NCBI RefSeq assembly: GCF_006345805.1
Contig: NC_043000.1
Coordinates: 45,074,001 to 45,138,000 of the forward strand
DNA length: 64,000 nucleotides
Direction: 5' to 3'
Origin: Octopus sinensis
Lineage: Eukaryota
Shown here: positions 340 through 60,330 of the stretch, piece by piece
Layout of the letters: every line of letters begins with the position of its first letter
Numbering within the stretch: position 1 is the stretch's first letter
Position numbers and translations under genes: made by a program
The notes under the pieces: model-generated
Seen by the model: only the letters and a program-made list of their open reading frames with translations
The model's database searches: none
What the model was told of the DNA's origin: nothing

Positions 340-2320
340 CCCTGAAGTCGATATCAGGCGTTATTCTCTCCTTTTTGACCTCACATATTTGAAATCCCAA
401 CTTATTTTTCTACTGAACCAAATTTCAAATTTCGTTGCTGAAAATGTAGCTTAGGAGGTGGTCAATCTAAAAATGTATAAACATCATCAAATTTTGGGAA
501 AAAACTGAATTAGTGACAAAGCGTAGGAGTTGTCACGAGTGAGTAAATGTAGACCTTAAGAATATTATTCATACACTACCATGTGTGAATGATATTAATT
601 ACAATGTAGTGTGTTCTATGAATATGAGATAGAACTTTGCAAGACACCTACATACTGAATTGAATCAAGCATTTTGCAATATTGGTTTCCAATTTTGGCA
701 GAAGGCCATCAAATCCGGAGGGAGGGGATGGAAGTTGATTACATCAACCTGAGTGCTCAGCTGATACTCATCTTATCGAATACCGCAAAGATAAAAGGCA
801 AAGACGACCTGGATGGAATTTGAACTCAGAATGTAGAGGTAGACGAAATACCGCAAAGCTTTCAGCCTGCGAGTTAACGACTCTACCAGCTCGTCGTCTT
901 AGTACTGTAATAAATAATAATATTACTTGAAAATTGTTTAACGTACTTTTGGCACATTTAGCTTATATAATAACTTCTTCATTTTTTTAAAAGATTAGTA
1001 CCACGACACTCGTCTTAATGAGTTCTATCATATGAGCTAAAAAAGAACAAAAGTTTTACACAAAAACAAAATGTTTAGGTTTAGAATTTGCTTTTAGGCG
1101 TTATCACTATTTTCGGCACATTTGGCCACAGTAGTTTTTTTGGTTTAATTTTTTTTAATATATAATTAGCATCATGGGATTCCTGTAATCGAGATCTATC
1201 AGAAAATCTAAATTTAAATACGGTTTTCTTTTGAAATAAGAATTATAATTGGAGCGAAAGTCGATTTCAGGCGTTAATCTCCTTTTTTTTCCCGCGTTTC
1301 ACCTTAGTACATTTTTTACTGAATATTTTTGCATATAATTAACATGAGCAGATTCCAGTCGTCGAGATCTATCATATAAGCTAAAATAAAATATAGATCT
1401 ATTTAAAAAAAGAAACAATTTGGACTCAATGTCGATTTCAGGCGCTTTTCTCTCGTATGTGACCTCATATTTGACGGAAACTTTTTTTCTCCTGAACCAA
1501 TTTTCAAATTTTGTACCTCGAAATGTAGCTTATGATGTGACCAATCTAAAAAAAGTAAATATAAACTAACTTGGTTAAAAACTGACTTATTGACAAAGCT
1601 TAGAAGTAGTCATGAGTGAGTAAATGCTGACCATAATAATATTATTCATACACTACCGTGTGTGAATGAAGTTTTTTGAATAGATTAGCACCGCGACACT
1701 TCTTTTGATGAGTTCTATCATATAAGTGAAAAAGAAAAAGTTTCGGTTTTTAATTTGATTTTAGGCATTACCACTTTTTTCGGTACATTTGGCCCCAGTA
1801 GTTTTCATTAACAAATTTTTGGGATATAATTCGCATCATCGGATTCTTCTAGTGGAGATCTATCAGAAAAGTTGAATTTAAATATAGTTTTCTTTAGAAA
1901 TAAGAATAATATTTGGAATTACAGTCGTTTTTAGGCGTTTATCTCCTTTTGTTTTCGCCGATTTTCACTTCAGTACTTTTGTCTAGTGAATTTTTTTCCA
2001 TATAAGTAACATGGATAGATTCCTCTCGCCGAGATCTATCATATAAACTAAAATAAAATATAGAATTCTTGAAAAGAATTTTGACTCAAAGTCGATTTCA
2101 GGCGTTACTCTCCCGTTTTTGACCTCACATATTTTACTGAAACTTTTTCTACCAAAACAATTTTCAAATTTTGTAGCTGAAAATGTAACATAAGATGTGA
2201 CCAGTGCAAAACAGTAAACATCATCTAATTTTAGTTAGTGACAAAGCTTAAACGTGGTCATGAGGGAGTAAATGTTGACTTTAAGAATATTATTCACACA
2301 CGGTAGTGTGTGAATGATAT
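340..2320. repeat. Higher-order tandem repeat: about 650-700 bp units built from about 175 bp subunits, each unit ending in a hairpin; two full units plus one partial
   Basis: Segment GACCTCACATATT...TATTATTCAYACAC..GTGTGAATGA recurs ending near 594, 1670 and 2318; subunit motif GAG(A/T)TCTATCA recurs near 1020, 1190, 1365, 1710, 1855 and 2032. Confidence 0.85.
685..900 (-). mobile_element. tRNA-derived SINE, family A, decayed
   Basis: Reverse complement aligns with the 2338-2570 copy. Confidence 0.75.
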
Positions 2321-2337
2321 ATAAACTTATTACCATT

Positions 2338-2570
2338 AAGGCGGCGAGCTGGCAGAAACGTTAGTACGCCGGGCGAAATGCGTAGTCATATTTCGTCTGC
2401 CGTTACGTTCTGATTTCAAATTCCGCCGAGGTCGACTTTGCCTTTCATCCTTTCGGGGTCGATAAATCAAGTACCAGTTACACACTGGATCGATGTAATC
2501 GACTTAATCCGTCTGTCTGTCCTTGTCTGTCCCCTCTATGTTTAGCTCCTTGTGGGTAATAAAGAAACAG
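2338..2570 (+). mobile_element. tRNA-derived SINE, family A, with 21-bp target-site duplication
   Basis: Pol III-like head (GAGCTGGCAGAA...GATTTCAAATTCC); central GCCTTTCATCCTTTCGGGGTCGATAAA domain (recalled as MetaSINE-like, unverified); flanked by ATATATAAAC(T/C)TATTACCATT at 2317-2337 and 2571-2591 (20/21 match). Confidence 0.9.
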
Positions 2571-2822
2571 ATATATAAACCTATTACCATTTTAAATATG
2601 CTTGAACTATATACGAACCTATAAGAAAGCCGTTCACGGTATTATGAAGAATGCCATGACTTTCTTACGGGTTCCAATATACCTTAAGTATATTTACACC
2701 AGTAATAAGTTAGTTGTTATACCCGTTATGTGCGTGCGTGTGTGTCTGTGTGTAGCTCCGGCCAAATAAACCCTGTCAGTATAGAGTACTCACTCTGATA
2801 AATGTGAAGTTATATTTATTAG

Positions 2823-3185
2823 GTGCATGAGCGGCTGTGTGGTAAGAATCTTGCTTTCCATCTACATGGTTCCGCGTTCGTTACTCTCCCGTTTTTGACC
2901 TCACATATTTTACTGAAATTTTTTTCTACCTTGTGAGTGGATTTGGTAGATGAAAACTAAAAGATACTGCGTGTGTTTTTACGTCTGAGTTTGTCCCCCA
3001 TCACCCCATGACAACCGGTATTAGTGCGTTTTCGCTTCTGTAGCTTAGAGATTCAGCAAAAGTGACTGATAGAATAAGTAATGGATTTTAAAGAAAAAAG
3101 GACTAGAGTCGATTCGTTCGACTAAAATCCTTCAAGGCACTGCCCCAGGATGGCCGAAGTCGAATGACTGAAACAAGTAAAAGGT
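2823..3185 (+). mobile_element. tRNA-derived SINE, family B, with an internal replacement
   Basis: Head GGCTGTGTGGTAAG, body CTTGTGAGTGGATTTGGTAGA, tail GACTGAAACAAGTAAAA shared with other copies in the window. Confidence 0.8.
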
Positions 3186-3222
3186 AATCCATAAAAATGA
3201 CTAAACATAAAAACAAACACTA

Positions 3223-3262
<40 letters not shown>

Positions 3263-3355
3263 AAATATATATATACACGCACACGTATGTATATTAGTGT
3301 TTGTTTTTATGTTTAGTCATCTTTTATGGATTACATTTTACTTGTTTCAGTCATT
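3163..3355. repeat. Inverted repeat with about 65-bp arms around a TA/TG microsatellite spacer
   Basis: 3163-3227 equals the reverse complement of 3290-3355 apart from 1 mismatch and 1 indel. Confidence 0.92.
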
Positions 3356-4454: not shown

Positions 4455-4615
4455 AATATATGTGTGTGTGTCTGTGTGTGTATGTGTGTATTCTCATATA
4501 CACGTATGACTGTGCATATATATATATATATGTGTGTGTGTGTGTATGTATGTATATATATATATATATATTCTCATATTCACGTATGAATGCATATATA
4601 TATATATAATATATA

Positions 4616-9128: not shown

Positions 9129-11810
9129 TCATCATCATCATCATCATCATCATCATCGTTTAACGTCCGTTCTCCATGCTAGCATGGGTTGGACGGTTCG
9201 ACCGGGGATCCAGGAAGCCAGAAGGCTGCACCAGGCTCCAGTCTTATCTGGCAATGTTTCTACAGCTAGATGCCCTTCCTAACGCCAACCACTCCGTGAG
9301 TGTAGTGGGTGCTTTTTACGTGCTACCTGCACAGGTGCCAGGCGAGGCTGGCAACGGCCATGGTCGGATTGGTGTATGTTACATGCCACCGGCACGGAAG
9401 CCAGTCGAGGTAGCGCTGGCATCGGCCACGAGTCGGATAGTGCTTTTTACGTACCACCAGACCAGGGATCCTGGCTGGTTCAATTCGATTTCGCTTGCCC
9501 CAACATGTCTTCACAAGCAAAGGGGGTTGGCATGGGTGCCTGTCGTCGGATGAGGTTCTATATCGACTTCGCTTGCCTCAACAGGTCTTTGTGTCCAAGG
9601 GAGGATAGGCATGCATAAGTGAGCTGGGCTCACTTGTCCTGCCTGGTCTTCTCATGTACAGCATATTTCCAAAGGTCTCGGTCGCTGGTCATTTCCTCAG
9701 TGAGGCCTAAAGTTCGAAGGTCGTGCTTCATCACCTCGTCCCAGGTTTTCCTGGGTCTACCTCTTCCACGGGTTCCCTCAACTGCTAGGGATTGGCACTT
9801 TCTCACACACCTATCTTCATCCATTCTCGCCACATGACCATACCAGCGCAATCGTCTCTCTTGCACACCACAACTGATGCTTCTTAGGTACAACATTTCT
9901 CTCAAGGTACTAACGCTCTGTCGAGTAAGTACACTGACATTACACATCCATCGGAGCATACTGGCTTCATTCCTCACGAGCTTATGCATGTCCTCAGCAG
10001 TCACAGCCCATGTTTCACTGCCATGTAGCATGGCAGTTCATACACATGCATCATACAGTCTGCCTTTTACTCTGAACGAGAGGCCTTTAGTCACCAGCAG
10101 AGGTAAGAGCTCCCTAAACTTTGCCCAGGCTATTCTTATTCTAGCAGTTACACTTTCAGCGCACCCACCCCCACTACTGACTTGGTCACCTAGATAACGG
10201 AAGCTATCAACTACTTCTAGTTTTTCCCCCTGGAAAGTGACGGAAGTTGTTTTCTGCAGATTTTCGGAGGTCAATGCTCCCGAGCATCTGCCACATACAA
10301 AAACTATCTTCCCAGTTAGCCTACCTTTGACATTGCTGCACCTCTTATGTGTCCATAGCTTACACTGGGTACATCTTATAGAGTTTCTACCTACACCTTT
10401 TCTACAGATCGAGCAGAGCCATCTTCCTGAAGACATTTGTGGATTGTCTACCTTTCTACTTATTAGTACTTTGGTCTTAGCTAGGTTGACTCTAAGGCCC
10501 CTTGATTCTAAACCCTCCTTCCACACCTGGAACTTCTCCTCCAGTTCTGATAATGACTCAGCAATTAGAGCAAGGTCGTCAGCATAGAGGAGCTCCCAGG
10601 GGCAACCTGTCTTGAATTCCTCCGCAATTGCCTGGAGGACTATGATAAATAGGAGGGGGCTGAGTACTGAACCCTGGTGGACCCCAACCTCTACTTTGAA
10701 TTCTTCTGTGTACATGTTGCCAACACTAACCTTACTTACGGCATCTCTGTACATGGCTTGCACAGCCCTCGCCAGCCATTCATCTATCCCTAGTTTCCTC
10801 ATTGACCACCAGATGAGGGATCGGGGGACCCTATCAAAGGCTTTCTCCATGTCAACGAAAGCCAGGTACAGGGGCTTATCTTTGGCTAGGTATTTCTCCT
10901 GCAGCTGCCTTACCAGGAATATAGCATCAGTGGTTCTTTTCCCTGGCACGAACCCAAACTGCATCTCATCTAAACTAACTCTCTCTCTAGTAACCTTCAT
11001 TAGCTGATCTAACAGCTTGATACCTCTGTAATTATTTGTATCTAGGGCATCACCTTTACCTTTGTAGCAGTTGACTAGTATGCTGCTACACCTGTCATTG
11101 GGTATGACTCCTTCGTGTATCACCTGGTTAACTATACGGGTGACTAGGTTATAGCCGACACTGCCAGATATTTTGAGCATCTCTGCAGTAATTCCTGATG
11201 GGCCTGGGGCTTTCCCTGTCTTCATGCTTCTAATTGCCTTAGCTACCACGGAACTATCAACTCGGATAGCTGGTCCCTCTGTTGGGTCAACATTCGGCAG
11301 ACTCTCTTTATCCCATTCATTTTCTTTATTCAGCAACCTTTCATAGTGGCATTTCTAAACCTCTCTCTTTGCATCCTCATTTAGCGCAAGTGAACCATCA
11401 TCCATGCGAACACACTTCTCTCCTACCACATCACGATTCTCTCTCACACACTGTCTTGCAACACGAAATACCTCAAGTCTTTGGTCCTCACGGGGCAGAA
11501 CATAGGCAAATTTTTTCTCATTGCTTCCCCTCTGGCTAAATAATCCTGTCTCCTAGCTTCCCTTCTGGCTGTCTGATACAATTCCCTGCTACCACCGTTC
11601 TTCCAGTGCTTCCAAGCCTGTCTCTTTTGTCTAATAGCCCTGTCAACCACAGTGTTCCACCACCATGTTACTCTGGGTTGAGATGGTACTTTGCTCCATC
11701 CACAGATCTGGTCAGTGGCTGTCAGCAGATTGTCCCGTAGAAATCTCCAGTCGTCTTCCACATTAAGTGAAGCTATATCCCCTTCTATTTCGTCAAAGGC
11801 TTCGAGAAGT
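9129..11810 (-). mobile_element. RTE-clade non-LTR retrotransposon, 5'-truncated, (GAT)n tail
   Basis: RT ORF, RTE-type C-terminus (RLRWYGHVARM...RGRGRPRKTW), about 480-nt 3' UTR, trinucleotide tail. Confidence 0.96.
10038..11336 (-). pseudogene. Reverse transcriptase of the RTE LINE (432-aa open stretch; stop after DACV, frameshift upstream)
   Basis: Motifs QFGF, FVDMEKAFD, GVHQGSVLSPLLF, YADD and SFRYLG. Confidence 0.95.
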
Positions 11811-24922: not shown

Positions 24923-24944
24923 CCCCATTTCTATTATCATTATT

Positions 24945-25490
24945 ATCATCATCATCATCGTTTAGCGTCCGCTTTCCATGCTAGCATGGGTTGGACGGTT
25001 CAACTGGGGTCTGGGAAGCCCGAAGGCTGCACCAGGACCAGTCTGATCTGGCAATGTTTCTACAGCTGGATGCCCTTCCTAACGCCAACCACTCTGTGAA
25101 TGTAGTAGTACTTTTTACGTGCCACCGGCACAGGTGCCAGACGAGGCTGGCAAACGGCCACGATCGGATGGTGCTTTTTACGTGCCACCAGCACGGGGGC
25201 CAGGCGAGGCTGGCAATGGCTACGAATGGATGGTGCTTTTTACATGCCACCGGCACGAGGCCAGTCGGGGCGGCGCTGACAACAGCCACATTCGGATGGT
25301 CCTCTTACGTGCCACCGGCACTGGTATCACAGCTGCAATTTCCATTGATGTTGATCGATTTCGATTCTCACTTGCCTCAACAGGTCTTCACGAGTAGAGT
25401 TTTGTGTCCTCAGAAGGAAAGGTATGCATAAGTGGACTGGCACATCCCGGGTTATGGTCTCACTTGTCTTGCCGGGTCTTCTCCTGCACA
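24945..25490 (-). mobile_element. RTE LINE 3' UTR plus ORF end, 5'-truncated
   Basis: Homology to 9129-9670; four GTGCCACCGGCAC-type repeats. Confidence 0.9.
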
Positions 25491-26110: not shown

Positions 26111-26694
26111 TCTTTCATCTAAGGCATCTATCGTGTGTCCTACTACTTTTTTAAGATGCTGGAATATGATTTGAGAAAAATTTAACTACTATTTATCACA
26201 AACTGAGCAGCCATATAAAAGCTCACTTGCTCGCTTGATTTCCCCCACTACCTTTGCTTGCCTCTAAGACAGTTCTTTACAATGATTGCTGTAGATTTTT
26301 ATAGAAAAGAAAAATTAATTACTTGCTTTTCCACTTACTATGGTAGCCTTTGAATCTGAATTTTAAATTTCCTGTGTAGATGGTGGATGCTGTTCTTGTT
26401 TTGCCCCAGTTCGACTCTAATCTAGTCAACTTATGATCAAATATCTACTAGTTTTCTTTTTTCTCTTGTCTTTTGAGTATATAGAACTACAATATCAAAT
26501 GTATCATTTACTTATTTATGATATGTGTGCAATTAGAAAATTTGGCTACTGTTTCTAACAGATTGAGGTATCCCATATGGTTTCATGCTTTAGCTTATGT
26601 TTGAATACAGTTTTTGGAAATGAATGTTGAAGATTTATGCAGAGGAAAATGAAATTTCATAAGATGTCTTTTGACATATCTAGGCTGTATTTAA

Positions 26695-27107
26695 CCCTTT
26701 CGTTATGAACCTGGCTGAAACTGACTGTGGCTCTGTAGTACAAATGTCTTGTTTTCATAAGTTTTGAATTAAAATCTTCTACCAAACATTATTTTTTATT
26801 TTTTATTTTATCTAGTTTCAGCTCACGAGCTGTGGACATGCTGGGGCACCGCCGTTTTAAAGGGAATGCTTACCGCACCTAGGTTTCCCAAGCGGTCACC
26901 CATCTAAGTACTAACTAGGATCGATGTTGCTTAACTTCGGTGATCGGACGAGAACCGGTGCTTTCAATGTGATATGGCCGTATGTCACAAATTATGTTCC
27001 TAATACCAGCTTAATGATAACTAAGTTATTTTACTAAATTCTTTGTTATTTTTTAAATAATTGAAAGAAACACAGAGCATCTCAAAATAAATATGGTAAC
27101 GAAAGTG
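26695..27107. mobile_element. piggyBac-like MITE interrupted by the 5S chimera
   Basis: TTAA at 26691-26694 and 27108-27111; termini CCCTTTCGTTA and TAACGAAAGTG are inverted repeats. Confidence 0.8.
26867..26982 (-). rRNA. 5S: 5S rRNA-derived copy (pseudogene or SINE head), lacking about 3 nt at the 5' end
   Basis: Reverse complement TACGGCCATATCACATTGAAAGCACCGGTTCTCGTCCGATCACCGAAGTTAAGCAA...TTAGTACTTAGATGGGTGACCGCTTGGGAA...GGTAAGCA matches metazoan 5S including the A and C boxes. Confidence 0.95.
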
Positions 27108-28105
27108 TTAAACTGATGAATTTGGTTTTGCTGTGCTATCATAAATAGATGCATTGTGTATGTGATAAGTAAAGGTGTAAGTATTTCATTTTTGATAGTC
27201 TGTAATTCTTTATATTTCATAGCAGAAAGTTAGGGTATGGTGTCCAGAAATGCTTGTTATAATGAACAAGAGCTGTAATAAATTAACGAAAGAGTTTCTA
27301 CTTGTATATCAGAAAATTCTTCCTCAAACTTTGCAATGCTTGATACTATAGCATACTTGAAGCTATGTACTTTTGATATTCTCAGTTACATTTGACCTGA
27401 GCCTACACAAAAATCAATGGTTGTAAGATAGTAGTTATTGTTAGAAATTTCATAATATTACAATATTAGTACCAATGATTGAGCATATTTTGTTCATTAC
27501 TCTTTGTACTTCGGTTATGTCCCCTGTTTTGCAGTAACAGTATTGATATTATGTGTTCTCTGAATGCACTGAAAATTTTAATCCTAATTCATGTCTGTCA
27601 TGTCCATTTCAGCAATTTTCAACTGACGTCCTCTCTTTTTTGCTTTCAGTAAAATAAACCTTTATTTTCACATTTTAATAAGAATCAGCTAATTTTCAGC
27701 AATGACTTGTTACCCGAATTAAACCAATGGCAAGAATTCTAATATCTTTTGGATGATATATTTATTTAGGCAAGATTTGTATCATGAGGAATTTCTGACA
27801 TAGGCTGCAGGAAATATATTTTAATGTTTACTTCAGAATAATTATCCATTAAAATTTTTCTGGTATCTTTTTCTTTGATAGTCTGTATTTGTTGACTTCT
27901 AGATAAAGCTACTAAAATATTGTATAATTCTGTTCAACGTAGAATCATTAGCCTCAGGTTTTATTTTCTATCTATGTGTTATTACCATTCTACATACAAT
28001 CGATGCTGGTTCATTTTCGTTATCAGCACTCATGAAGGCAATGTATGTCTCTCTTTTCTTTTGTACGTGGAGCATACATACATACATTCATACATACATA
28101 CATAC

Positions 28106-28136
<31 letters not shown>

Positions 28137-28182
28137 CATACATACTCATATATATTTGTATGCAGGTATATGTATATATATG

Positions 28183-28269
<87 letters not shown>

Positions 28270-31379: not shown

Positions 31380-31575
31380 TGTACACTGGTACCATATATA
31401 AAGCACACTCTGTAAAGTGATTGGCATTAGGAAGGGCATCCGGCCATAGAAACCAAGCCAAATCAGACTTTAGAACCTGGCGCAGCCATTGGCTTTGCCA
31501 GCACCTGTAAAGCCATCCAACTCTTGCCAGTATGAAAAATGAATGTTGAATGTCGATGGTGACAATGATGATAGA
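31380..31575 (+). mobile_element. RTE LINE 3' end, older subfamily
   Basis: TTGGCATTAGGAAGGGCATCCGGC...CCATCCAACTC...GATGAT, the reverse complement of the RTE tail. Confidence 0.7.
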
Positions 31576-31744
31576 TGTGTGTGACTGATTCCATGGCTGC
31601 AATCCAATGAGTGAAACCAGTAAAAGATAAAAGACATGAAAGAATTTTACTTCACATTCTTTCAGTCCACTCAGCAAGCAAAATATATATATAACAACTA
31701 AAGGTGGTGCTCCAGCATATATATATATGTATATATATAATTAT

Positions 31745-32098
31745 ATACTCTTTTACTTGTTTCAGTCATTTGACTCCAGGACTAATTCTTTGGAAGCCTA
31801 GTACTTATTCTATCGGTCTCTTTTGCCGAAACGCTAAGTTATGGGGATGTAAACACACCAGCATCGGTTGTCAAGTGATGTTGGGGGTGGGGACAAACAC
31901 AGACACACAAGCACACACACATACATATATATACATATACATATATACGACTGGCTTCCATCTACCAAATCCACACACATGGCTTTGGTCGGCTCGAGGC
32001 TATAGTAGAAGACACTTGGCCAAGGTGCCAAGCAGTGGGACTTAACCCAGAACCATGTGGTTGGTAAGCAAGCTACTTACCACACAGCCATTCCTGTG
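31745..32098 (-). mobile_element. tRNA-derived SINE, family B
   Basis: Full head-to-tail homology with other family B copies; internal microsatellite. Confidence 0.9.
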
Positions 32099-32246
32099 TC
32101 TATTTCAAATGGGTGAATTTCTAATAGTATAGATTTCCTTGGATTCTAAATTTTAAATATTACCAGCTTGAATAATCACTTGTACTATTTTGTATTTCAA
32201 ATTGAACAAACTATGAATGCTGATAAAGAATTAAACTGTAGAAGTG

Positions 32247-32929: not shown

Positions 32930-33028
<99 letters not shown>

Positions 33029-33088
33029 ATGTATACACATATATATAATATATATATACACATATATACATACATATACATATACATA

Positions 33089-33123
<35 letters not shown>

Positions 33124-33178
33124 TATATATATATATACATATATACATATATACATATACATATATATACATACATAC

Positions 33179-33210
<32 letters not shown>

Positions 33211-33212
33211 TT
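32930..33212. repeat. (TA)n-rich microsatellite
   Basis: Direct reading. Confidence 0.95.
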
Positions 33213-34660
33213 AGTGAAGCTATTATATCACATTACAATAGAAATGTCATTGTTTCACATATAATACCAAAAGTCTAAGAGATAGTTCTGGGCTCACATT
33301 GGGCACGATAGGTAAGAAGTTAAGCATTGTTTTGGCTCATGACACTCCATGCACCCTAAGTAATGCATGTGTAAAATTTGAATGAAATCGGCTGGGTAGT
33401 TCTTGAGTTTTAGTGATGCACACATAGACAAATAGTCAAACAGATAGAATGTATGTGTCTTGTATGTGTGTGTGTGTGTTGTGTGTGTGTGTGTGTGTGT
33501 GTGTGCATAAAGGTAAAGATGATATATGCACATACTCCTTTTGTGGATAGTTGTGAAGAGCTTCCACTCTTTGGCATCCATGTAAAATTATACTAAAATC
33601 ATATGATGCCAGAATCACAATAGTCATTTACAATAAAATAAACAGCAATTTAGATTTCTTTTCGATAAATTCATAAATTTTGGGCGAATATTTCTTTGAT
33701 TAATCACTTTTAATATCAGGTTGAGGTATGTTTGCCCTAAAAATGTTAGCAGTATTATGTCTTCTTCTGTAACCAAGATTTCTGTGTTCTCTTTTTAAGC
33801 TTCTGAGTTTTCTATTTTCTATTTGTCCTGTGTTCGATTTTGTAAGCAGCTTCTTCATCCACTTCTGGGCACATTAATCCAGCCATGAATCTCAATAACT
33901 CTCGTTGTAGATTGATTTCCATATCTCATGCATTCATGTATTGCAGTGCTATGTCTTGAGTTCAAAGCATACGTATTTCCACTTTGAGTTGTTCTGAAGG
34001 CTGTTTCTGCATGTGTTTTGTTATTTTTATTTATTATTTATTTTTTTTGTTGATTAATTTCCTTGTACAGTTCTTTTGTAGCATGTTTACCTGTTTTTCT
34101 TTGATTTACCTTAATTTCCCACATTTTTCTGTTGTGGTTTCATTTTCATCATGAAGTCTTATCCAAAGTTGCTTTTGTAACCGTCAAACCAACAATCTTG
34201 TTTTTACAACAGTTTTGTAGATTTATCTTTATCGTGCTTCATATCTTCTTTCCATAGTTGTTGGAGCAGTTCCTGAATTTGACAATTATTTCGATCAGAG
34301 ATTTTGGCCAGCATGAAAGGGTTGATTATTTTAAATGTTGCCTCATATCATACTTTACTTGCCTGTGGAAGAGAAATTTCAGTATCTAGATGGCATAATG
34401 CTAAATTTACACCTCTTTCCATTTCCTGTTGATGTCACATTAGCCTTTCATTTTCATGAAGAAATTTTGTCATAGGATTGTTTTTTCTCTGTGTCATCAA
34501 ATCTGATAGATGCTTGCAACGTTTTTATATAAAAAGCTGTTCCAGTGTGCTAGCCAGCATTCATTTAGGGAGTTTGTATGCATAGTTATATACATCTCTG
34601 TATTTGTATAAATAAAAATATACATACACACACAGAGGCACACATATACATGTGTGTGTG

Positions 34661-34696
<36 letters not shown>

Positions 34697-34797
34697 TATA
34701 TATGCATATATATGTATATATCTACATATATATATGTAGGTATATATATATTCATATAAATGTATGTATATAAGTATATAAATATTCATATATATAT

Positions 34798-34906
<109 letters not shown>

Positions 34907-35262
34907 CAGACACACTTATATCACTGGTCAATGTCACTCACTTGCATATGCATGCCCTAACAGAACCTGTATATATCCATAGGCACATACACTCATGCAC
35001 AAAATTATTTCACTGGATCTAAAACTCTATCATGCAAAATTCTTCTTACTTAAAATTTGAACACAGAATAAGTTTTGACTTTCCACATCATCTCAGTCTA
35101 TGGTCGTTGATATCTTGGTCAACAATATAAGAATGTAATCTCCATTTCATCAGCAGGGACAAAAATTACTTTACATTAACTACACAGAACAAAACAGGAT
35201 AATAACAGTATATTTTCTCTCATTTCTTTAAGCAAATTGAAAGACATTTTCATATTTGTATA

Positions 35263-35632
35263 CTCTTTTACTCTTTTATTTGTTTCAGTCATTTGAACAA
35301 ATCAACCCCAGGACTTATTCTTTGTAAGCCTAGTACTTATTCTATCAGTCTCTTTTGCCAAACCACTAAGTTACTGGGATGTAAACACACCAGCATCAGT
35401 TGTCAAGCGATGTTGGGGGGACAAACACAGACACACAAACATATACATACACATACATATATATACATATATACGACGGGCGTCTTTCAGTTTCCATCTA
35501 CCAAGTCCACTCACAAGGCTTTGGTCAGCTCGAGGCTATAGTAGAAGACATTTACCCAAGGTGCCATGCAGTGGGACTGAACCTGGAACCATGTGGTTGG
35601 TAAGCAAGCTACCTACCACGCAACCACTCCTG
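35263..35632 (-). mobile_element. tRNA-derived SINE, family B, part of a local duplication
   Basis: Family homology; flank shared with the 40060 copy. Confidence 0.9.
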
Positions 35633-37249
35633 TGCCTATTTGTTGGGTATTATTCATAATTGGATCATTCTCTGCTCCAATTTTTACTGTAATTTGCATC
35701 AAAATTATTCGATAGTTTGAATGGTTTGTGTCAAAGACTGGGCATTTGTATACTAGCTCAAAACTCTTTATTCAAAAGTCAAATGCATTTTAGATTTTGC
35801 CACATTTGTTTCACACTCTGGTATTTCTGTCAGGTTGATCAGCCACACAGAGGCTTCCTCAGGGGCAACTTGATGATAGCAGTAGACCAAATAAGTAGAA
35901 AGAGAGCTTGAATTATTTTGAAGAAATAGTTAAATGGGGACATGAGATTATTGTGTCTTGGCAATACTGTAATACAGTGTGAAACATGGAGTTAACATCG
36001 CTCAAATGATGAATAAGCAGGCATTAACATTAGTGAGAAAAAAGCTGATAGCAGAATGTAGTAGATCTCTTTTTAATAATTGTTTCCTTAATGAACGTCA
36101 GCTGTTAATATGCTATTAAACATTCAAACTTCTGACTTAAAAGTGTTCATTGCATTCAGTCATTTTGCTTCTTTGATTGCAAAGGAAGTGAAAACTTTAT
36201 TTAACTCCCTTGAGAAACTTATCTTTTACCTTTTTGAACAAAGGATTTGGAGCTCCTTCAATAGTACTATTATTATTGATGCCAATATTATCAAGGGAGA
36301 GGCAAAGCTACCAGTCTATTGAGAAGCTGGTTGGTGTCACTTCCCACACATTACTCAGTTTAGTTGTATAGAGAAAATATTTCAGATTATCATTTCAAAA
36401 GAAACACACAGAAACCAATGCTCTATGTACTTTTTTTTCGTATTAAATATAAATGAACATCTTTACTAGTTGCTTTTTTCATAAACTTTACACAATAAAG
36501 ATCAAATAGATAGTGATCTGTGTTATTGGAAGACCTTTTGGAAATTTTCGTATTATTATTATTGTTGTTGTTGTTGTTTTCTTTTTCATTCATATCTTTT
36601 TTATATTTTCTTTCATAAGCTCCAATTGTTTATTCTGTGGAGACAGTCACTCTATCACATGACTTTTATGCACTCTTCTTAACCAAAGAGCAAACAAACG
36701 TAGCTAAAGTTTCATGTGATTTTTTGCCAAACACAAATGAAATGAAAAGAAAAGAATTGAGAAAGCTTGCTTTCAAATAGATTAAAAAAGAAATTTCTTC
36801 TCATTATTGTGGAAGCTTATGAGGTGGCAAGTAAGCAGAATTGGTTGAATGCCAGACAGACTAAAAATCTTGTAGTATTTAATTTCATTTCTCTACCATT
36901 TTCAATTCAACTTTCATCATGTTAGCCTTGTCTTCCCTCCATCTGCACTGGAGGTGGGTAGAATAAAATAACTACCATCATATTGTACTAAATATTGGGC
37001 ATGAACTGGTGCTAATTCAAATGCTTCCTTTCCTTATAAATTTCTGGTATTTTGCTAATCTAAAACATCAGTATTGTTTATTGTTGCAATCAAGGAATAG
37101 ATAGAATGCTAAGAGCATCAGACAAAACATTTTAACAGTATTTAGTTATGGCCTTGCACATTTTCAGTTTAAATCCTGTCGAGGTTAGCTTCACTTTTTG
37201 TCCTCCCCAGCTCAGAAAAATTAGGCTCTAATCAAGTATTGAGTTTCAT

Positions 37250-37625
37250 ATAGGCATAGGAGTGGCTTACAAACCAGATGGTTCTGGGTTCAGTCCCACT
37301 GTGTGGCACCTTGGGCAAGAGTATCCTACAATAGCCTTGGGCTGACCAAAGCCTTGTCAGTGGATTTGGTAGACAGAAACGGAAAGAAGCCCGTCGTATA
37401 TATGTATATATATATATATGTATGTGTGTGTATATGTTTGTGTGTTTGTGTTTGTCCCCCCCAACATCGCTTGACAACCGATGCTGGTGTGTTTACGTCC
37501 CCATAACTTAGCAGTTCTGCAAAAGAAGCCGATAGAATAAGTACTAGGCTTACAAAGAATAAGTCCTGGGGTCAATTTTACTTGTTTCAAATGCCTGAGA
37601 CAAGTAAAAGAGTAAAAGAGTATAT
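37250..37625 (+). mobile_element. tRNA-derived SINE, family B
   Basis: B box GGGTTCAGTCCC, CACCTTGGGCAAG, (GAGTAAAA)n tail. Confidence 0.9.
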
Positions 37626-40059
37626 AACTAACACTAATTTGTTCCAATGTTAAATATTAATATTTGCATTATTTTTAACCAAGATTAGCACTGATAGAGC
37701 AGACCTATAAGTAAAGATTCTCCCAGCATAATCATCCATCACTTTCTATCACTGTTATCCAAGCACATTAGCTCATTTAAGGCAGTAGGGTGTGATTTAT
37801 ATAAGAAATAAATTGTTCACCCATAGAGACTAAGCGTAAAATGATGATAACAATAATGTTCTCTCTAAATACGTTATAAAATAAGTACCAGTACTTATTA
37901 CCAGACACACCAAATTACTTTACTGTAATTCTAACTTCTGTATAAAAATTTCATTTGCAAGCAGAAATGAAAATGTTACAAAAGTATATAAGTAAATAAA
38001 GTCAACAACATTTTCAATAAAGTTTAAAACCAAACAAGACAAATCTGATGTGCAAATGTAAATACAAATTGTAACCATTTCATTTAACTGTGAGTAAGGC
38101 ATGAGTGTCATCCAACCATCGTTTTTATCCCCTATAAACTTGAACCTACTTGTGTGTCTGTGTTAATGATAAATATTAAGAATGCCTGCTGAGATATTCA
38201 GTTTTACATATTAATAATAAACAGACCTATAGAAGAAGCTTCAACAGTGATCTCTCATTTATCATGGTAGATTGGTTCCGAGACTGACCACGATACCTGG
38301 ATTACAGTGTTTATTTAACATGTATTTGGACTTTTAAAACCCTCCCTGTACTGTCAATAACCCACCCATTACAGTAGTCTATTAATAACAAGGACAACTG
38401 TTAAGCAATAACACTTTAGATTTATAAAAATAAAGATTGTTATTGTTGCACATGCCAGATTACAAAAGAGAAAGCAGTGATTCGTCGTCTCTTTTCATTA
38501 CATCAATCACAGCTCGTTAAGTTCAAATACCCCTGTATATGCTTTTTTGCTATTTTAGGCTTGTTTTGTTGTTCCTAGACTAGGAAATAATATTTATTAT
38601 TAATATTTTAATGGATTCAAGGAAAAACGTTAGGCGTTCATATATATATATTTTTAAAATCCGTGAAGTTGTGAATCCACGATAGTTGAACCGCAAAGTA
38701 GTGAGGGATCACTGTATATGGTTACTGATCCTGAGAAAAAGCAACCAACTTCCCTTGAATTACACCTTACTCTCTTAAATGAAGATACACTGGATAGTTT
38801 TGTCTTCGACACGCTCTGGAACCACTGGTACTGATTAATGACTATGTATATTGGTTAATGTGGCACAGCACACTGACCACACTACACACTCACTCACTGC
38901 AGGAATCAGCAGCACAAATATTCATAAAACCACAATACATCATATTTAGAAAGAAAGAACCTGTTGCAAAATGTCTGGAAAAAAGAAAGAATGGATGCAT
39001 CCAGAATACTTTTGATCATGGATCTATTTGATCTCGGGTCTATTTGATCAGAACTGATGGGAAAGGGAAGCTAATCAACAATACCAACAACCAAATGATA
39101 ATTGAAGTGATATCCCTAATGTTCAGTTTCCCCAATTCACTATCATAAAGTTTATTAGTTTTTTTGTTGGTATTTTTTTTGGTGGTGGGGAGGAAAAATT
39201 CAATTTATTTAGCCTGAAGCTAATTAAAAATCTTTAGAAGCACATATTTTATTTTTATCATTTGGGTGTAAATGATCAGGCATCAAAGGATTCCAATGGG
39301 GATTAGATAACATGAAGATAATTTTAAATAAACAGCAATTGCCCAAAATTTAATTGTGCTCGTTTGTTTTTGAGACAGTTTTTATTATGTGAAATAAGGG
39401 GAGGTTGGAATGAAGGAAAAAATTACACAAACCATGCAGATAATGCTCCTTTTGAAATTTAAACTCAATAAAAATAAATCCCCAAGTCATGCATGGAAAA
39501 AACAGAAAAAGCAAATAACTTCCATTTATTTATTTATTTATTTATTTTTACATATTTTAATTTATAGGATAAAATGCTTTTCTTTATTTCTAAGGAGGAC
39601 TCTATCTAAGTGTAAATGACACATTTACTTTTGATTTTACTCTTGGTTTGGTAACTAACTTTGTAACCACATTTTTTCCACCACTAGTACAGAGGAAATT
39701 AAATGATACCCATTCAATCACATATACACATGCATGAATGTTAGGCAAAAGTTCAGCAAACAAAATAAAATTGAATAGTTTTATCTTGAACAGACATCTG
39801 GTTTGTAGCTTATGGTGATAAATAACATAATTTAATGATATATTAACTGAACTGCATCTTCAACACTGAAAACAAAAAAAAGGAGTATGCAAATGTATGA
39901 CACTGTAAAAATTATTTAAATAGGTTCTGGTTTATATACATTTGACAGTTTAGAGTTCCATTCTTATTTTGTTTTTTGTCAGGTTTTTTTGTAACTTGGG
40001 AGAGTTTGCATATCAATAATTTTTGTATACATGGACAGAAATTTGAAAAAATTAGATTC

Positions 40060-40421
40060 TTTTGACTGTGGCCATGCTAGAGCACTGCCTTTAGTTGAAG
40101 AAATCGACCCCAGGACTTATTCTTTGTAAGCCTAGTACTTATTCTATCAGTCTCTTTTGCCAAGCTACTAAGTTACAGGGACGTAACAACACTAACATCA
40201 GTTGTCAAGCGATGGTGCGGGTACAAGCACAGACACACAAATATGCATATGCACACACATACGATGGGATTCTTTCAGTTTCCATCAACCAAATCCACAT
40301 TCACAAGGCTGTGGTCAGCCTGAGGCAATAGTAGAAGACACTTACCCAAGGTGACACACAGTGGGACTGAACCTGGAACCATGTGGTTTGTAAGCAAGCT
40401 ACTTACCATGCAACCACTCCT
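40060..40421 (-). mobile_element. tRNA-derived SINE, family B, part of a local duplication
   Basis: Family homology. Confidence 0.88.
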
Positions 40422-41984: not shown

Positions 41985-42272
41985 GATGATGATGATCATC
42001 ATCATCATTTAGCGTCCGCTTTCCATGCTAGCATGGGTTGGACGGTTCAACTGGGGTCTGTGAAGCCAGAAGGCTGCATCAGGCCCAGTCTGATCTGGCA
42101 GTGTTTCTACGGCTGGATGCCCTTCCTAATGCCAACCACTCCGTGAGTGTAGTGGGTGCTTTTTACGTGCCACCGGCACGGGGCCAGGCGAGGCTGGCAA
42201 CAGCCACGAACGGATGGTGCTTTTTACGTGCCACTGGCACGAGGCCAGTCGAGGCGGCACTGGCAACGGTCA
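41985..42272 (-). mobile_element. RTE LINE 3' end
   Basis: Homology to the 9129 tail. Confidence 0.9.
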
Positions 42273-42278
42273 GATGAT

Positions 42279-42366
42279 GATTATTATTATTCAGGTCACT
42301 GCCTGGAATTGAACTCGGAATCTTGGGGTTAGTAGCCTGTGCTCTTAACCACTATGCCATATGCCC
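42279..42366 (-). mobile_element. Short tRNA-derived SINE or tRNA-like retrocopy with (AAT)n tail
   Basis: Reverse complement GGGCATATGGCATAGTGGTTAAGAGC...GAGTTCAATTCCAGG has A and B boxes; no perfect cloverleaf. Confidence 0.75.
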
Positions 42367-47943: not shown

Positions 47944-48729
47944 CCTTTTAGTATTAAAACTGGCCATATCTGACCAAAATATTCCGCCTCTTTTATCATC
48001 AAACTAGCTAGGTCAAGCATCTCACACTTGCACTACAATGTTAAACTAGAAACAATCACATCATCAAAATCTTGAAGCCACAAGATACTCTTTTACTCTT
48101 TTACTTGTTTCGGTCATTTGACTGCGGCCATGCTGGAGCACTGCCTTTTAGTTGAGCAAATCGATCCCAGTACTTACTCTTTGTAAGCCTAGTACTTATT
48201 CTACCAGTCTCTTTTGCCAAACCGCTAAGTTACAGGGACGTAAACATACCAGCATCGGTTGTCAAGCGATGTTGGGGGGAGACAAACACAGACACACAAA
48301 CATGTACATACATACGTATATATATATACATATATACGACACACAAACGTATACACACACATACATATATATATATACATATATATACATATATACGATG
48401 GGCTTCTTTCAGTTTCCGTCTACCAAATCCACTCACAAGGCTTTGGTTGGCCTGGGGCTATAGTAGAAGACACTTGCCCAAGGTGCCATGCAGTGGGGCT
48501 CAACCCAGAACCTTGTGGTTCGTAAGCAAGCTACTTACCACACAGCCACTCCTACGTCTATAAAGGTTAAGGGTTGTTCTCCAACTTTACATGATTATTT
48601 CAAAACAATGTGAATAAATACGCATTACATTTGACAGTGAGAATACATGATTAATTCAAAACAATGTAAATAAATAAGCATTACACAGACAGAGTAAATA
48701 AATAAGTGTTATATTTGACAGTGAAAAGG
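47944..48729. mobile_element. piggyBac-like MITE interrupted by a SINE and rearranged
   Basis: TTAA flanks at 47940-47943 and 48730-48733; CCTTTT/AAAAGG termini; duplicated right-hand segment. Confidence 0.6.
48088..48555 (-). mobile_element. tRNA-derived SINE, family B, with expanded internal microsatellite
   Basis: Family homology. Confidence 0.92.
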
Positions 48730-52619: not shown

Positions 52620-53025
52620 ACACAGGCGTGGTTGTGAGGTAAGAAGCTTCTTCCCAACTACATGGTTCTGGGTTCAGTCCCACTGCATGGCACCTTAGGC
52701 AAATGACTTTTACTATAGCCTTGGGTTGACCAAAGCCTTGAGAGTAGATTTGGTAGATAGAAACTGAAAGAAGCCCATCGTAGTTATACACATGTATGTA
52801 TTTGTATGCATGTGTCTTCATGTCTGTGTTTGTCCCCCCGCCATCGCTTGACAACCAATGTTGGTGTGTTTACGTCCCCGTGACTTAGCAGTTTGACAAA
52901 AGAGACCAATAGAATAAGTACTAAGCTTACAAAGAATAAGTCCTGAGGTTGTTTCCTTTGACTAAAACATTTTAAGGTGGTGCTCCAGCATGGACGCAGT
53001 CAAATGACTGAAACAAGTAAAAGTG
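52620..53025 (+). mobile_element. tRNA-derived SINE, family B
   Basis: Family homology. Confidence 0.88.
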
Positions 53026-53065
53026 TAAAAGAATTTATATATATGTGTGTGTGTGTGTATGTATG

Positions 53066-56559: not shown

Positions 56560-57145
56560 AAATGGCTAGTAACTGAGACTTTTGGAAATATGCTGTGCTT
56601 GAGAAGACCTGGCAAGCCAAACGAGGCCATAACCTCGTGGCCTATGCCAGGGGCGTAACCAGCCCACTTATGTGTACCTTTCTTTCTTTGGACACTAAAC
56701 TCTGCTTGCGAAGACCTGTTGAGGCAAGTGAAATCAAAATCAAATTCGATGACCGGCATCCGTGCTAGTGGGGCGCAAAGAGCACAATACGAACAAGATG
56801 GTCGACAGAGCAACTAACTGGCTTTCATGCCAGTGGAACGTAAAAGGCACCATTCGAGTGTGATCGTTACCAGCGTCGCCTTACTGGCACTTGTGCCCCA
56901 TGCTAGTGGGGTGCTAAGAGCACCATCCATGCGAGATCGTTGCCAGAGCGGCTAACTGGCTTCCGTGCCAGTAGCACGTAAAAGCACCCACTACACTCTT
57001 GGAGTGGTTGGCGTTAGGAAGGGCATCCAGCTGTAGAAACTCTGCCAGATCAAGATTGTAGCCTGGTGCAGCCATCTGGTTCGCCAGCCCTCAGTCAAAT
57101 CGTCCAACCCATGCCAGCATGGAAAGTGGATGTTAAACGATGATG

Positions 57146-57147
<2 letters not shown>
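56560..57147 (+). mobile_element. RTE LINE 3' end, sense orientation, (GAT)n tail
   Basis: Reverse complement of the RTE tail and ORF end. Confidence 0.9.
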
Positions 57148-57182
<35 letters not shown>

Positions 57183-59789: not shown

Positions 59790-60270
59790 TATCATCATCA
59801 TCATCATCATCATCAGCGTTTAACGTCTGCTTTCCATGCTAGCATGGGTTGGACGATTTGACTGAGGACTGGTGAACCAATCTTAATCAGGCAGAGTTTC
59901 TATAACCGGATGCCCTTCTTTACGCCAACCACTCTGAGAGTGTAGTGGGTGCTTTTACGTGCCACCAGCATGAGGGCCAGTCAGGTGGTACTGGCAACGA
60001 CCATGCTCAAAATGTGATTTTTTATGTGCCACCTGCACAGGAGCCAGTCCAGTGGTACTGGCAATGACCTCACTCAAAAGTTTTTCAGGTGTCACCGGCA
60101 CAAGTGCCAGTAAGGTGACGCTGATAACGATCACGCTCAAATGGTGCTCTTAGCGCTCTACTAGCACGGATGCCAGTCATCGAATTTGAGTTCGATTTCA
60201 CTTGCCTCAACAGGTCTTCACAAGAGTTTAGTGTCCAATGAAGGAAAGGTATGCATAAGTGGGCTGGTCT
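59790..60270 (-). mobile_element. RTE LINE 3' UTR, same subfamily as the 56560 copy
   Basis: Shares GATTTGACTGAG-type diagnostic segment. Confidence 0.88.
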
Positions 60271-60277
60271 ACATGCA

Positions 60278-60329
<52 letters not shown>

Positions 60330-60330
<1 letters not shown>

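What the first reader, a model, noticed from the sequence alone, without database searches (positions are those of the whole stretch)
26790..26982. 5S rRNA head fused to a LINE-type tail: candidate cephalopod SINE3
Seen on the - strand: about 116 nt of 5S with internal Pol III boxes, a short linker (TTCCCTTTAAAAC), then GGCGGTGCCCCAGCATGTCCACAGCTCGTGAGCTGAAACTAGA and (TAAAAA)n. This tail is homologous to the 3' end of family B tRNA-SINEs in the window. It sits inside a piggyBac-like MITE with no evident TSD. Known: SINE3 families use a 5S head and borrow LINE tails; L2/CR1 insertions often lack TSDs. Inference: either an undescribed 5S-derived SINE family or a single template-switch chimera. 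I know of no such octopus family but could not search.
Basis: partly seen in the sequence, partly recalled or inferred. Interest (0 to 1): 0.78.

Follow-up and report, generated by a model that had tools for sequence, protein, structure and literature searches.

The report
Octopus 5S-headed SINE copy
A decayed 5S ribosomal RNA copy is fused to the kind of tail that octopus jumping genes use to get copied, so it is most likely one copy of a 5S-derived SINE, a class already listed in octopus repeat tables but never described in detail.

Summary
Window 26867-26985 (- strand) is a full-length 5S rRNA sequence (Rfam 93.9 bits, E 5e-19). It runs directly into a ~77-nt tail: a 13-nt linker, two hairpins, GAAACTAGA and A-rich short repeats. 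[quoted passage not shown] It keeps hairpin 2 through 2-3 compensatory base-pair changes, so it comes from a related but distinct tail lineage. The 5S promoter region is intact (21/21 conserved positions), the rRNA fold is not (6/34 pairs broken), and no T4 terminator occurs before the 3' flank. The element sits in a TTAA-flanked, piggyBac-like MITE and has no detectable TSD.

Copy number could not be tested. No tool searches octopus DNA, and two peptide searches across the junction found nothing, without a positive control. The claim of "no such octopus family" does not hold at catalogue level. Published annotations list SINE/5S in O. vulgaris (9.8 Mb, 4 families) and O. bimaculoides, which predicts about 225 bp per 64 kb; I see 196 bp. 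A 2024 review lists no characterised mollusc 5S SINE.

Best reading: a copy of a catalogued but undescribed octopus SINE3-type family (about 0.68). Main rival: a one-off template-switch chimera (about 0.22). Interest is low to moderate.

The parts
26867..26985 (-). 5S rRNA-derived head, full length (119 nt). The internal Pol III control region is conserved and the rRNA helices are partly broken.
   Evidence: Rfam RF00001, 93.9 bits, model 1-120. 66% identity to the pan-life consensus over 118 columns. 21/21 highly conserved positions kept in model region 45-98. 6 of 34 pairs are non-canonical: 3 in helix I, 2 in helix II, 1 in helix V.
26854..26866 (-). 'Linker' TTCCCTTTAAAAC. It replaces the 5S T-run terminator and may be the 5' edge of the tail module.
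   Evidence: Sequence. It aligns loosely with TCCTTCAA / CATTTTAA / CTTTTCAA, which precede hairpin 1 in three tRNA-SINE copies. Weak evidence (A/T-rich, needs gaps).
26834..26853 (-). Tail hairpin 1, GGCGGUGC-CCCA-GCAUGUCC.
   Evidence: MFE fold. Helix 1 is 88% paired across 6 tails, with 3 invariant pairs.
26819..26832 (-). Tail hairpin 2, CAGCUC-GU-GAGCUG. The tRNA-SINE has CAGUCA-AA-UGACUG here.
   Evidence: Three double-sided changes, UA>CG, CG>UA and AU>CG; the third is the loop-closing pair. 87% of cells pair against 24-47% in the slid controls. 0 of 500 shuffles reach the covariation score.
26811..26818 (-). Conserved 3' box (G)AAACTAGA. The tRNA-SINE has GAAACAAG.
   Evidence: Alignment A1.
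26789..26810 (-). A-rich short tandem repeats TAAAAT/TAAAAAA. The tRNA-SINE has (TAAAAGAG)n.
26771..26774 (-). First T4 run on the sense strand, the candidate Pol III stop, in the flanking DNA about 15 nt (14 intervening bases) past the repeats.
   Evidence: There is no T4 inside the 196-nt element; the first is at element position 212.
26691..26705 (+). Left end of the host MITE: TTAA target site plus terminal inverted repeat CCCTTTCGTTA.
   Evidence: Inverted repeat I5; pattern scan gives 2 hits against 0.14 expected.
27097..27112 (+). Right end of the host MITE: TAACGAAAGTG plus TTAA.
52963..53031 (+). Comparator: tail of a tRNA-type (CORE-like) SINE copy. Other tails lie at 48090-48158(-), 57343-57411(+), 3123-3191(+) and 40041-40102(-).
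   Evidence: Covariance model R1, 42.8-87.4 bits; sequences.

Best explanation
This is one decaying genomic copy of a 5S rRNA-derived SINE (SINE3-type, 'simple': head plus tail with no body) in an octopus genome.

Proposed mechanism:
1. RNA polymerase III starts at the 5S +1 using the internal type-1 promoter (box A / intermediate element / box C).
2. The 5S T-run terminator is gone (…GTAAGCATTCCC…), so transcription continues through the ~77-nt tail and stops at the first T4 in flanking DNA.
3. The tail (two hairpins, a GAAAC-AG box and short A-rich 3' repeats) mimics the 3' end of a stringent-type LINE. The LINE's reverse transcriptase binds it and copies the RNA into a nicked target by target-primed reverse transcription.
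4. This copy landed inside a TTAA-flanked, piggyBac-like MITE.

The tail belongs to the same tail family as the dominant octopus tRNA-type SINE, but to a different lineage. Its second hairpin has a different stem and loop that still pairs.

Shown: the anatomy, the tail homology, the hairpin covariation, the intact promoter region, the lack of an internal terminator and the broken rRNA helices. Inferred: transcription, mobilisation, the partner LINE and membership of a multi-copy family.
For: - Full-length 5S at 93.9 bits.
- 21/21 highly conserved positions across the internal control region are kept, while 6/34 helix pairs are broken. The promoter is preserved but the rRNA function is not.
- No T4 occurs until about 15 nt (14 intervening bases) past the element.
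- The two-hairpin structure is kept, with 2-3 compensatory pairs in this element.
- The window is octopus DNA: best named hit is O. vulgaris at 82%, and LINE copies are about 88% identical to O. vulgaris chromosome OX597814.1.
- Published O. vulgaris annotation lists SINE '5S' at 9,831,953 bp in 4 families. Only 42 kb of that is <=2% diverged, so the bulk is diverged and interspersed rather than homogenised rDNA arrays.
- That amount predicts about 225 bp per 64 kb; 196 bp is observed.
- SINE/5S and SINE/5S-Core-RTE are listed for octopuses in Marino 2022.
- About 24,000 5S-derived loci, 'likely SINEs', are reported in the giant squid.
Against: - No second copy of the 5S-tail junction was seen anywhere: one 5S head among 14 tail modules in 85 kb of octopus DNA.
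- A junction peptide found no relatives in 5.8 billion clustered proteins or in 1.84 billion representatives. These are weak negatives without a positive control.
- No LINE carrying this tail was found. The only LINE family in the window ends in a different hairpin plus (GAT)n.
- No TSD.
- The published 'SINE/5S' labels are automated classifications. I could not see their consensus sequences, and the two papers differ more than 10-fold in implied copy number (about 1,000-3,000 against up to about 50,000).
- The same architecture is expected for a one-off chimera.
Confidence: 0.68

Rival explanations
1. One-off chimeric retropseudogene. During target-primed reverse transcription of a LINE or SINE RNA, the reverse transcriptase copied only the last ~60-77 nt. 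It then switched template onto a mature 5S rRNA and copied that to its 5' end. The result is a single, immobile 5S-tail fusion. This is also the proposed birth event of SINE3-type families.
For: - The layout is exactly bipartite: complete small RNA at the 5' end, short LINE/SINE 3' fragment at the 3' end, same orientation, with the junction at or within 13 nt of the 5S 3' end.
- Only one such junction is seen in 85 kb, against 13 tRNA-SINE tails.
- The peptide searches found no other copies.
- Template switching to small RNAs, including 5S, is the published model for chimeric retrogenes and for 5S-headed SINE heads (Buzdin 2003 and Nishihara 2006, as cited).
Against: - The tail variant (CTC-GU-GAG hairpin, A-rich repeats) is not found on any other element in the sample, so its donor is itself unseen.
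- Published annotations imply thousands to tens of thousands of 5S-class SINE copies in octopus. That makes a family copy the more probable origin of a 5S element met in an arbitrary 64-kb window.
- The 5S terminator is absent and no T4 occurs inside. A family needs this, but a chimera would have it only by chance.
Confidence: 0.22
2. MITE cargo. The 5S-tail unit was captured once inside a piggyBac-like MITE. Any further copies arose by cut-and-paste or replicative spread of the MITE, not by retrotransposition.
For: The element lies wholly inside a TTAA-flanked structure with significant terminal inverted repeats. A piggyBac element and MITE carrying rDNA-derived sequence has precedent (Pokey/mPok in Daphnia, listed).
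Against: No second copy of this MITE, with or without the insert, is in the window or in L047. The MITE category is small in the O. vulgaris annotation (186 kb).
Confidence: 0.04
3. Two independent neighbours. A severely 5'-truncated LINE or SINE tail and a separate 5S retropseudogene or orphon happen to lie head to tail.
For: There is no TSD around the whole unit. 5'-truncated tail fragments do occur in the window, for example 31560-31634 and 40041-40102.
Against: The two parts abut within 0-13 nt, in the same orientation, exactly at the 5S 3' end. The 5S ends precisely at its RNA termini, which argues for an RNA-mediated origin, yet a bare 5S rRNA has no tail of its own for a stringent LINE to use. 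This is the only 5S in 64 kb.
Confidence: 0.04
4. A functional or variant 5S rRNA gene.
For: Full-length, high-scoring Rfam match with an intact internal control region.
Against: 6 of 34 helix pairs are non-canonical, including 3 of 9 in helix I. There is no T-run terminator after the coding end. It is a solitary copy inside a transposon, not in a tandem array.
Confidence: 0.02

Closest known systems
SINE3 / 5S rRNA-derived SINEs (zebrafish SINE3, Kapitonov & Jurka 2003; HaSE3 and other lepidopteran SINE3; fruit-bat MEG and springhare Ped-1)
   Same: 5S-derived head that keeps the internal Pol III promoter, followed by a 3' part used to borrow a LINE's reverse transcriptase. Such families are said to have arisen independently several times.
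   Different: There is no body or central domain; zebrafish SINE3 and AmnSINE1 carry a Deu domain. [quoted passage not shown] The tail is a two-hairpin, short-repeat type shared with an octopus tRNA-SINE, not a poly(A) tail as I recall for the mammalian 5S SINEs (own knowledge, not checked here). Copy number is unproven.
Octopus tRNA-derived CORE-type SINEs (OR1/OR2, Ohshima & Okada 1994; 'SINE/tRNA-Core', 27-31% of octopus repeat copies)
   Same: Homologous ~70-nt 3' tail: hairpin 1, hairpin 2, GAAAC-AG box and short tandem repeats. They share the genome, with about 12 copies in this window.
   Different: The head is 5S, not tRNA. There is no CORE body and no internal TG/TA microsatellite. 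The hairpin-2 stem and loop and the 3' repeat unit differ. I did not test the window's 'family B' against OR1/OR2 or a CORE consensus; that assignment rests on abundance and on my recollection.
Chimeric retrogenes made by template switching (U6-, 5S-, 7SL-L1 chimeras; Buzdin et al. 2003)
   Same: A complete small RNA fused upstream of a LINE/SINE 3' fragment, in the same orientation.
   Different: Those are L1-driven, poly(A)-tailed and TSD-flanked. Here the tail is of the stringent, structured type and no TSD is detectable. Uniqueness of the junction is untested.
UnaSINE1 / UnaL2 (eel; Kajikawa & Okada 2002)
   Same: Working model: the SINE is mobilised because its 3' stem-loop and terminal repeats are those of the partner LINE (cited).
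   Different: No partner LINE has been identified here and nothing was tested experimentally. The clade of the partner (RTE, CR1 or L2) is unknown.

Membership tests
SINE (SINEBase definition, Vassetzky & Kramerov 2013) | Short (<1 kb), non-tandem genomic element | tested here: met
   196 nt from 5S +1 to the end of the A-rich repeats. It is a single, non-tandem 5S in 64 kb.
SINE (SINEBase definition) | [quoted passage not shown] | not testable with these tools
   No tool searches octopus genomic DNA. Metagenome and prokaryote contig scans gave only chance bacterial hits and contain no octopus SINEs at all, so the positive control failed. Peptide searches found nothing. Indirect support: published SINE/5S totals of 9.8 Mb in 4 families and about 1,000-3,000 copies.
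SINE (SINEBase definition) | At least 60% identity to 5S rRNA over at least 60 nt | tested here: met
   78/118 = 66% identity to the pan-life Rfam consensus over the full length, 93.9 bits. Identity to the host's own 5S was not measured, because no cephalopod 5S sequence was available.
SINE (SINEBase definition) | Not a plain RNA pseudogene: extra module(s), or diagnostic changes shared with a source gene | tested here: inconclusive
   It has an extra LINE-type tail module. Diagnostic substitutions shared among copies cannot be assessed from one copy.
SINE3-type (5S-headed) SINE | 5S head retaining the internal Pol III promoter (box A / IE / box C region) | tested here: met
   21/21 highly conserved consensus positions are matched in model region 45-98. 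The box positions come from my knowledge of the Xenopus 5S gene.
SINE3-type (5S-headed) SINE | Read-through into the tail: 5S terminator lost, no internal T4 | tested here: met
   …GTAAGCATTCCCTTTAAAAC…; the first T4 is at window 26774-26771, past the element.
SINE3-type (5S-headed) SINE | 3' tail shared with an autonomous partner LINE | tested here: inconclusive
   The tail is shared with a co-resident SINE family and is structurally conserved. None of the 14 tail modules in 85 kb sits on a LINE body. The window's LINE ends differently, …CCATGCTAGCATGGAAAGCGGACGTTAAAC(GAT)n.
DeuSINE / 'SINE/5S-Deu-L2' (zebrafish SINE3, AmnSINE1) | Deu central domain between head and tail | tested here: not met
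   Only 13 nt lie between the 5S 3' end and tail hairpin 1, so there is no room for a central domain. No sequence comparison with a Deu consensus was run.
Template-switch chimeric retrogene | Bipartite: complete small RNA at the 5' end, LINE/SINE 3' fragment at the 3' end, same orientation | tested here: met
Template-switch chimeric retrogene | Junction unique in the genome | not testable with these tools
   Same limitation as for copy number.
Functional 5S rRNA gene | Canonical helices, T-run terminator, tandem array | tested here: not met
   6/34 pairs are broken, there is no terminator, and the copy is solitary.
piggyBac-like MITE (the host element) | TTAA target duplication plus terminal inverted repeats starting CC(C) | tested here: met
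   TTAA|CCCTTTCGTTA … TAACGAAAGTG|TTAA, 15/16 complementary, 2 hits against 0.14 expected. The multi-copy status of the MITE was not shown.

The most novel reading that the evidence does not exclude
This is a copy of a genuine multi-copy 5S-headed 'simple' SINE of octopuses that arose independently of the vertebrate and insect SINE3 families. It would be the first to be characterised in a mollusc or lophotrochozoan. Its tail marks a second, still unidentified LINE lineage whose 3' stem-loop has co-varied away from the one used by the dominant tRNA-Core SINE. If so, octopus SINE heads (tRNA, 5S) have been shuffled onto a diversifying set of LINE recognition tails.
Probability: 0.45. Interest if true: 0.4.

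Novelty: new member of a known kind. Interest (0 to 1): 0.27.

Why it matters
Octopus genomes are unusually rich in SINEs, about 12% of the genome. Yet the heads, tails and LINE partners of these elements are barely described; 1,279 of 1,317 SINE families in the 2026 annotation are 'unclassified'. A worked example of a 5S head on a tail that co-varies with the main tRNA-SINE's tail gives a concrete handle on which LINE lineages drive octopus SINE expansion. It would also extend characterised 5S-derived SINEs beyond reptiles, insects, fish and mammals. It changes no concept: 5S-headed SINEs, shared LINE/SINE tails and template-switch origins are all established, and octopus 'SINE/5S' already appears in annotation tables.

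Tried and rejected
1. DNA scans for the junction. The pattern GGTGCNGTARGC-N(3-25)-GGCRGTGCYCCAGCATG in metagenome contigs gave 0 hits. A looser pattern matching both tail types gave 25 metagenome and 21 prokaryote-genome hits. All were GC-rich bacterial contigs with no similarity beyond the 20-mer. Those collections hold no octopus repeats, so they say nothing about copy number.

2. Peptide route to other copies. The + strand frame stays open across tail, linker and the 5S 3' end. The search for homologous proteins found no candidate. HMMER against 1.84 billion representatives found only P0121, an unrelated GC-rich repeat protein.

3. Sampling more octopus DNA through LINE proteins. Only P0014 (O. 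vulgaris) was usable, giving L047 (20.9 kb). A second search seeded with P0014 returned no further octopus proteins. L047 has tRNA-SINE tails but no 5S.

4. The window's own LINE as partner: rejected. It is an RT plus PHD-like finger element whose copies are about 88% identical, and it ends in a different hairpin plus (GAT)n.

5. 's57410' as a separate SINE family with the closest tail: rejected. It is a tRNA-SINE 3' half lying next to a 3' fragment of that LINE.

6. TSD search: nothing above chance.

7. CpG observed/expected is 1.12 in the element, 0.39 in the window and 0.27-0.67 in the SINE copies. I do not use this to argue for youth, because 5S is intrinsically CpG-rich and I had no host 5S reference. 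Walker & Doolittle 1983 is not held.

8. Low-score Rfam 'mir-297/mir-466/mir-3149' hits are TG/TA microsatellites, not genes. ARAGORN finds no tRNA in the SINE heads.

9. A full-text search for either tail sequence or the SINE body found no paper.

Full report
**1. What is there**

On the minus strand, window 26985-26867 is a full-length 5S rRNA sequence. Rfam RF00001 matches model positions 1-120 at 93.9 bits against a gathering score of 38, E 4.7e-19. It is the only 5S match in the 64 kb, even at E<=1. Every other low-score Rfam hit is a TG/TA microsatellite posing as a miRNA.

- TTCCCTTTAAAAC (26866-26854)
- GGCGGTGCCCCAGCATGTCC (26853-26834)
- A, then CAGCTCGTGAGCTG (26832-26819)
- AAACTAGA (to 26811)
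- TAAAATAAAAAATAAAAAATAA (26810-26789)

The 5S part is 119 nt rather than about 116, and it runs 3 nt past the stated end.

**2. State of the 5S head**

All 21 highly conserved consensus positions in model region 45-98 are matched. From my knowledge of the Xenopus 5S gene, this region spans box A, the intermediate element and box C. In contrast, 6 of 34 base pairs are non-canonical: three in helix I, two in helix II and one in helix V.

No T-run follows the 3' end (…GTAAGCATTCCC…), and no T4 occurs anywhere in the 196 nt. The first T4 is at 26774-26771, about 15 nt (14 intervening bases) past the A-rich repeats.

So this is not a working 5S gene. It does keep what a Pol III-driven retroposon needs: a promoter, and read-through into the tail.

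**3. The tail**

A local-alignment scan with the 43-nt core found three other loci at score 38, against a maximum of 28 for shuffled queries. It has about 12 copies or fragments in the window, with a tRNA-like head, a TG/TA microsatellite in the middle and the tail GGCAGTGCTCCAGCATGGCCGCAGTCAAATGACTGAAACAAG(TAAAAGAG)n.

Folding gives the same two hairpins in all tails. The individual z-scores are unremarkable at about -1.

The alignment is more telling. On the six-tail alignment A1, 87% of cells pair, against 24-47% when partners are slid. No shuffle out of 500 reaches the observed covariation score. Hairpin 2 of the 5S element differs from the SINE's by double-sided changes at three stacked positions: UA>CG, CG>UA and AU>CG, the last being the loop-closing pair.

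Caveats: there are only six related sequences, and the structure was derived from them.

Reading: the tail on the 5S head is an intact recognition module from a related but different lineage. It is not a degraded piece of the tRNA-SINE. The loop (CGUG against AAAU) and the terminal repeat unit also differ.

The 'linker' aligns loosely with an 8-nt stretch (TCCTTCAA / CATTTTAA / CTTTTCAA) that precedes hairpin 1 in three SINE copies. The 5S 3' end may therefore abut the tail module directly. This is weak evidence.

A covariance model of the tail, run with filters off, finds 14 modules in the window plus L047. One is on the 5S head, the rest are on tRNA-SINE bodies or their deletion subfamily, and none is on a LINE body.

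**4. Surroundings**

The element lies inside a TTAA-flanked structure with terminal inverted repeats: TTAA|CCCTTTCGTTA at 26691, and TAACGAAAGTG|TTAA ending at 27112. The repeat matches 15/16, with 2 hits against 0.14 expected by chance. This fits a piggyBac-like MITE of roughly 220 bp without the insert.

No other copy of the MITE is in the window, so there is no empty-site comparison. No target-site duplication flanks the 5S-tail unit; the best repeat is 7/8, which 41% of random site pairs equal or beat.

**5. Organism and LINEs**

The RT ORF at 10038-11336(-) has its best named hit in Octopus vulgaris, at 82% identity. A 20.9-kb stretch of O. vulgaris chromosome OX597814.1 (L047) carries the same LINE family at about 88% DNA identity.

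That LINE (RT plus a PHD-like finger) ends …CCATGCTAGCATGGAAAGCGGACGTTAAAC(GAT)n. It is therefore not the partner for this tail. The partner LINE remains unidentified.

**6. Family or one-off?**

This is the crux, and I could not test it directly.
- The contig collections open to DNA pattern search contain no octopus repeats at all, so the positive control failed.
- A peptide translated across tail, linker and the 5S 3' end found no relatives by word index or by exhaustive HMMER. Gene callers seldom call ORFs in such DNA, and I had no quota left for a positive control, so these are weak negatives.
- A second homology search meant to harvest octopus loci for sampling returned none.

**7. What the literature adds**

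- Bonar et al. 2026 (PMC13282606) list SINE class '5S' in O. vulgaris at 9,831,953 bp in 4 consensus families. Only 7 insertions (42 kb) are <=2% diverged. Most of the class is therefore diverged, as expected for interspersed copies rather than homogenised rDNA arrays.
- That total is 0.35% of 2.8 Gb, which predicts about 225 bp per 64-kb window. The window has 196 bp.
- Marino et al. 2022 (PMC8967140, Table S2) list SINE/5S at 0.030% of repeat copies in O. bimaculoides and 0.039% in O. vulgaris, roughly 1,000-3,000 copies. They also list SINE/5S-Core-RTE in O. bimaculoides and SINE/5S-Deu-L2 at 1.18% in the giant squid.
- The giant squid genome paper notes about 24,000 5S-derived loci, 'likely SINEs'.
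- I found no paper that describes a cephalopod 5S SINE's structure or prints either tail.
- The consensus library is on Zenodo, which I cannot reach.

**8. Verdict**

The most probable explanation (about 0.68) is a decaying copy of a 5S-headed, body-less SINE. It would be mobilised through a structured LINE-type tail and would belong to a class already labelled in octopus annotations but never characterised.

The main rival (about 0.22) is a single template-switch chimera. It would have the same architecture, and it is also the accepted way such families are born. MITE cargo, chance neighbours and a functional 5S gene are minor or refuted.

By SINEBase's own criteria, length and 5S similarity are met, and the 100-copy criterion is untested. 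So I do not file it as a proven SINE family member.

Novelty: a new member of a known kind, possibly already catalogued. Interest is low to moderate. The one feature worth carrying forward is the compensatory hairpin difference between the two tails, which points to two LINE lineages serving different SINE heads.

Noticed in passing
window 9143-11809 (-) and about 59808-63174 (-); 3' fragments at 24944-25366 (-), 41987-42286 (-) and 56850-57148 (+): Two large copies and several 3' fragments of one LINE family. It encodes an RT followed by a PHD-like zinc finger, its copies are about 88% identical to one on O. vulgaris OX597814.1, and it ends in the hairpin CCATGCTAGCATGG…GTTAAAC plus a (GAT)n microsatellite. 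It may be the 'Dong-R4' class that is abundant in octopus annotations, but the clade was not tested.
   Followed up: partly
window 35260-35634 (-), 37265-37623 (+), 31746-32102 (-): A deletion subfamily of the tRNA-type SINE. It lacks hairpin 1 and the 5' arm of hairpin 2 (…GATTTGTTCAAATGACTGAAACAAATAAAAGAG…) yet occurs in three copies. This suggests the full two-hairpin tail is not strictly required, or that the deletion arose in a master copy.
   Followed up: partly
window 26691-27112: A TTAA-flanked, piggyBac-like MITE with terminal repeats CCCTTTCGTTA / CACTTTCGTTA hosts the 5S element. A third similar terminus (TAACGAAAGAGTT) lies at 27284-27296 without an adjacent TTAA.
   Followed up: partly
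protein P0002: A protein labelled 'MAG: hypothetical protein [Herbaspirillum sp.]' on a 1.5-kb contig is 72% identical to this octopus LINE reverse transcriptase. It is almost certainly animal DNA contaminating a bacterial metagenome bin.
   Followed up: no
window 31560-32102: A cluster of nested or fragmented tRNA-SINE pieces in both orientations, with interrupted tails (for example GGTGGTGCTCCAGCATATATATAT at about 31690-31718). This looks like a local insertion hotspot or a rearrangement.
   Followed up: no
window-wide, e.g. 3231-3293, 4524-4590, 28058-28218, 33009-33220, 34583-34765: Dozens of sub-threshold Rfam 'mir-297 / mir-466 / mir-3149 / mir-1277' hits. All sit on TG/TA microsatellites and are artefacts, not miRNA genes.
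   Followed up: yes
window-wide: CpG observed/expected is 0.39 for the window and 0.27-0.67 in the tRNA-SINE copies, but 1.12 in the 5S-tail element. This may simply reflect the CpG-rich 5S source. It could also mean a younger or less methylated insertion.
   Followed up: partly
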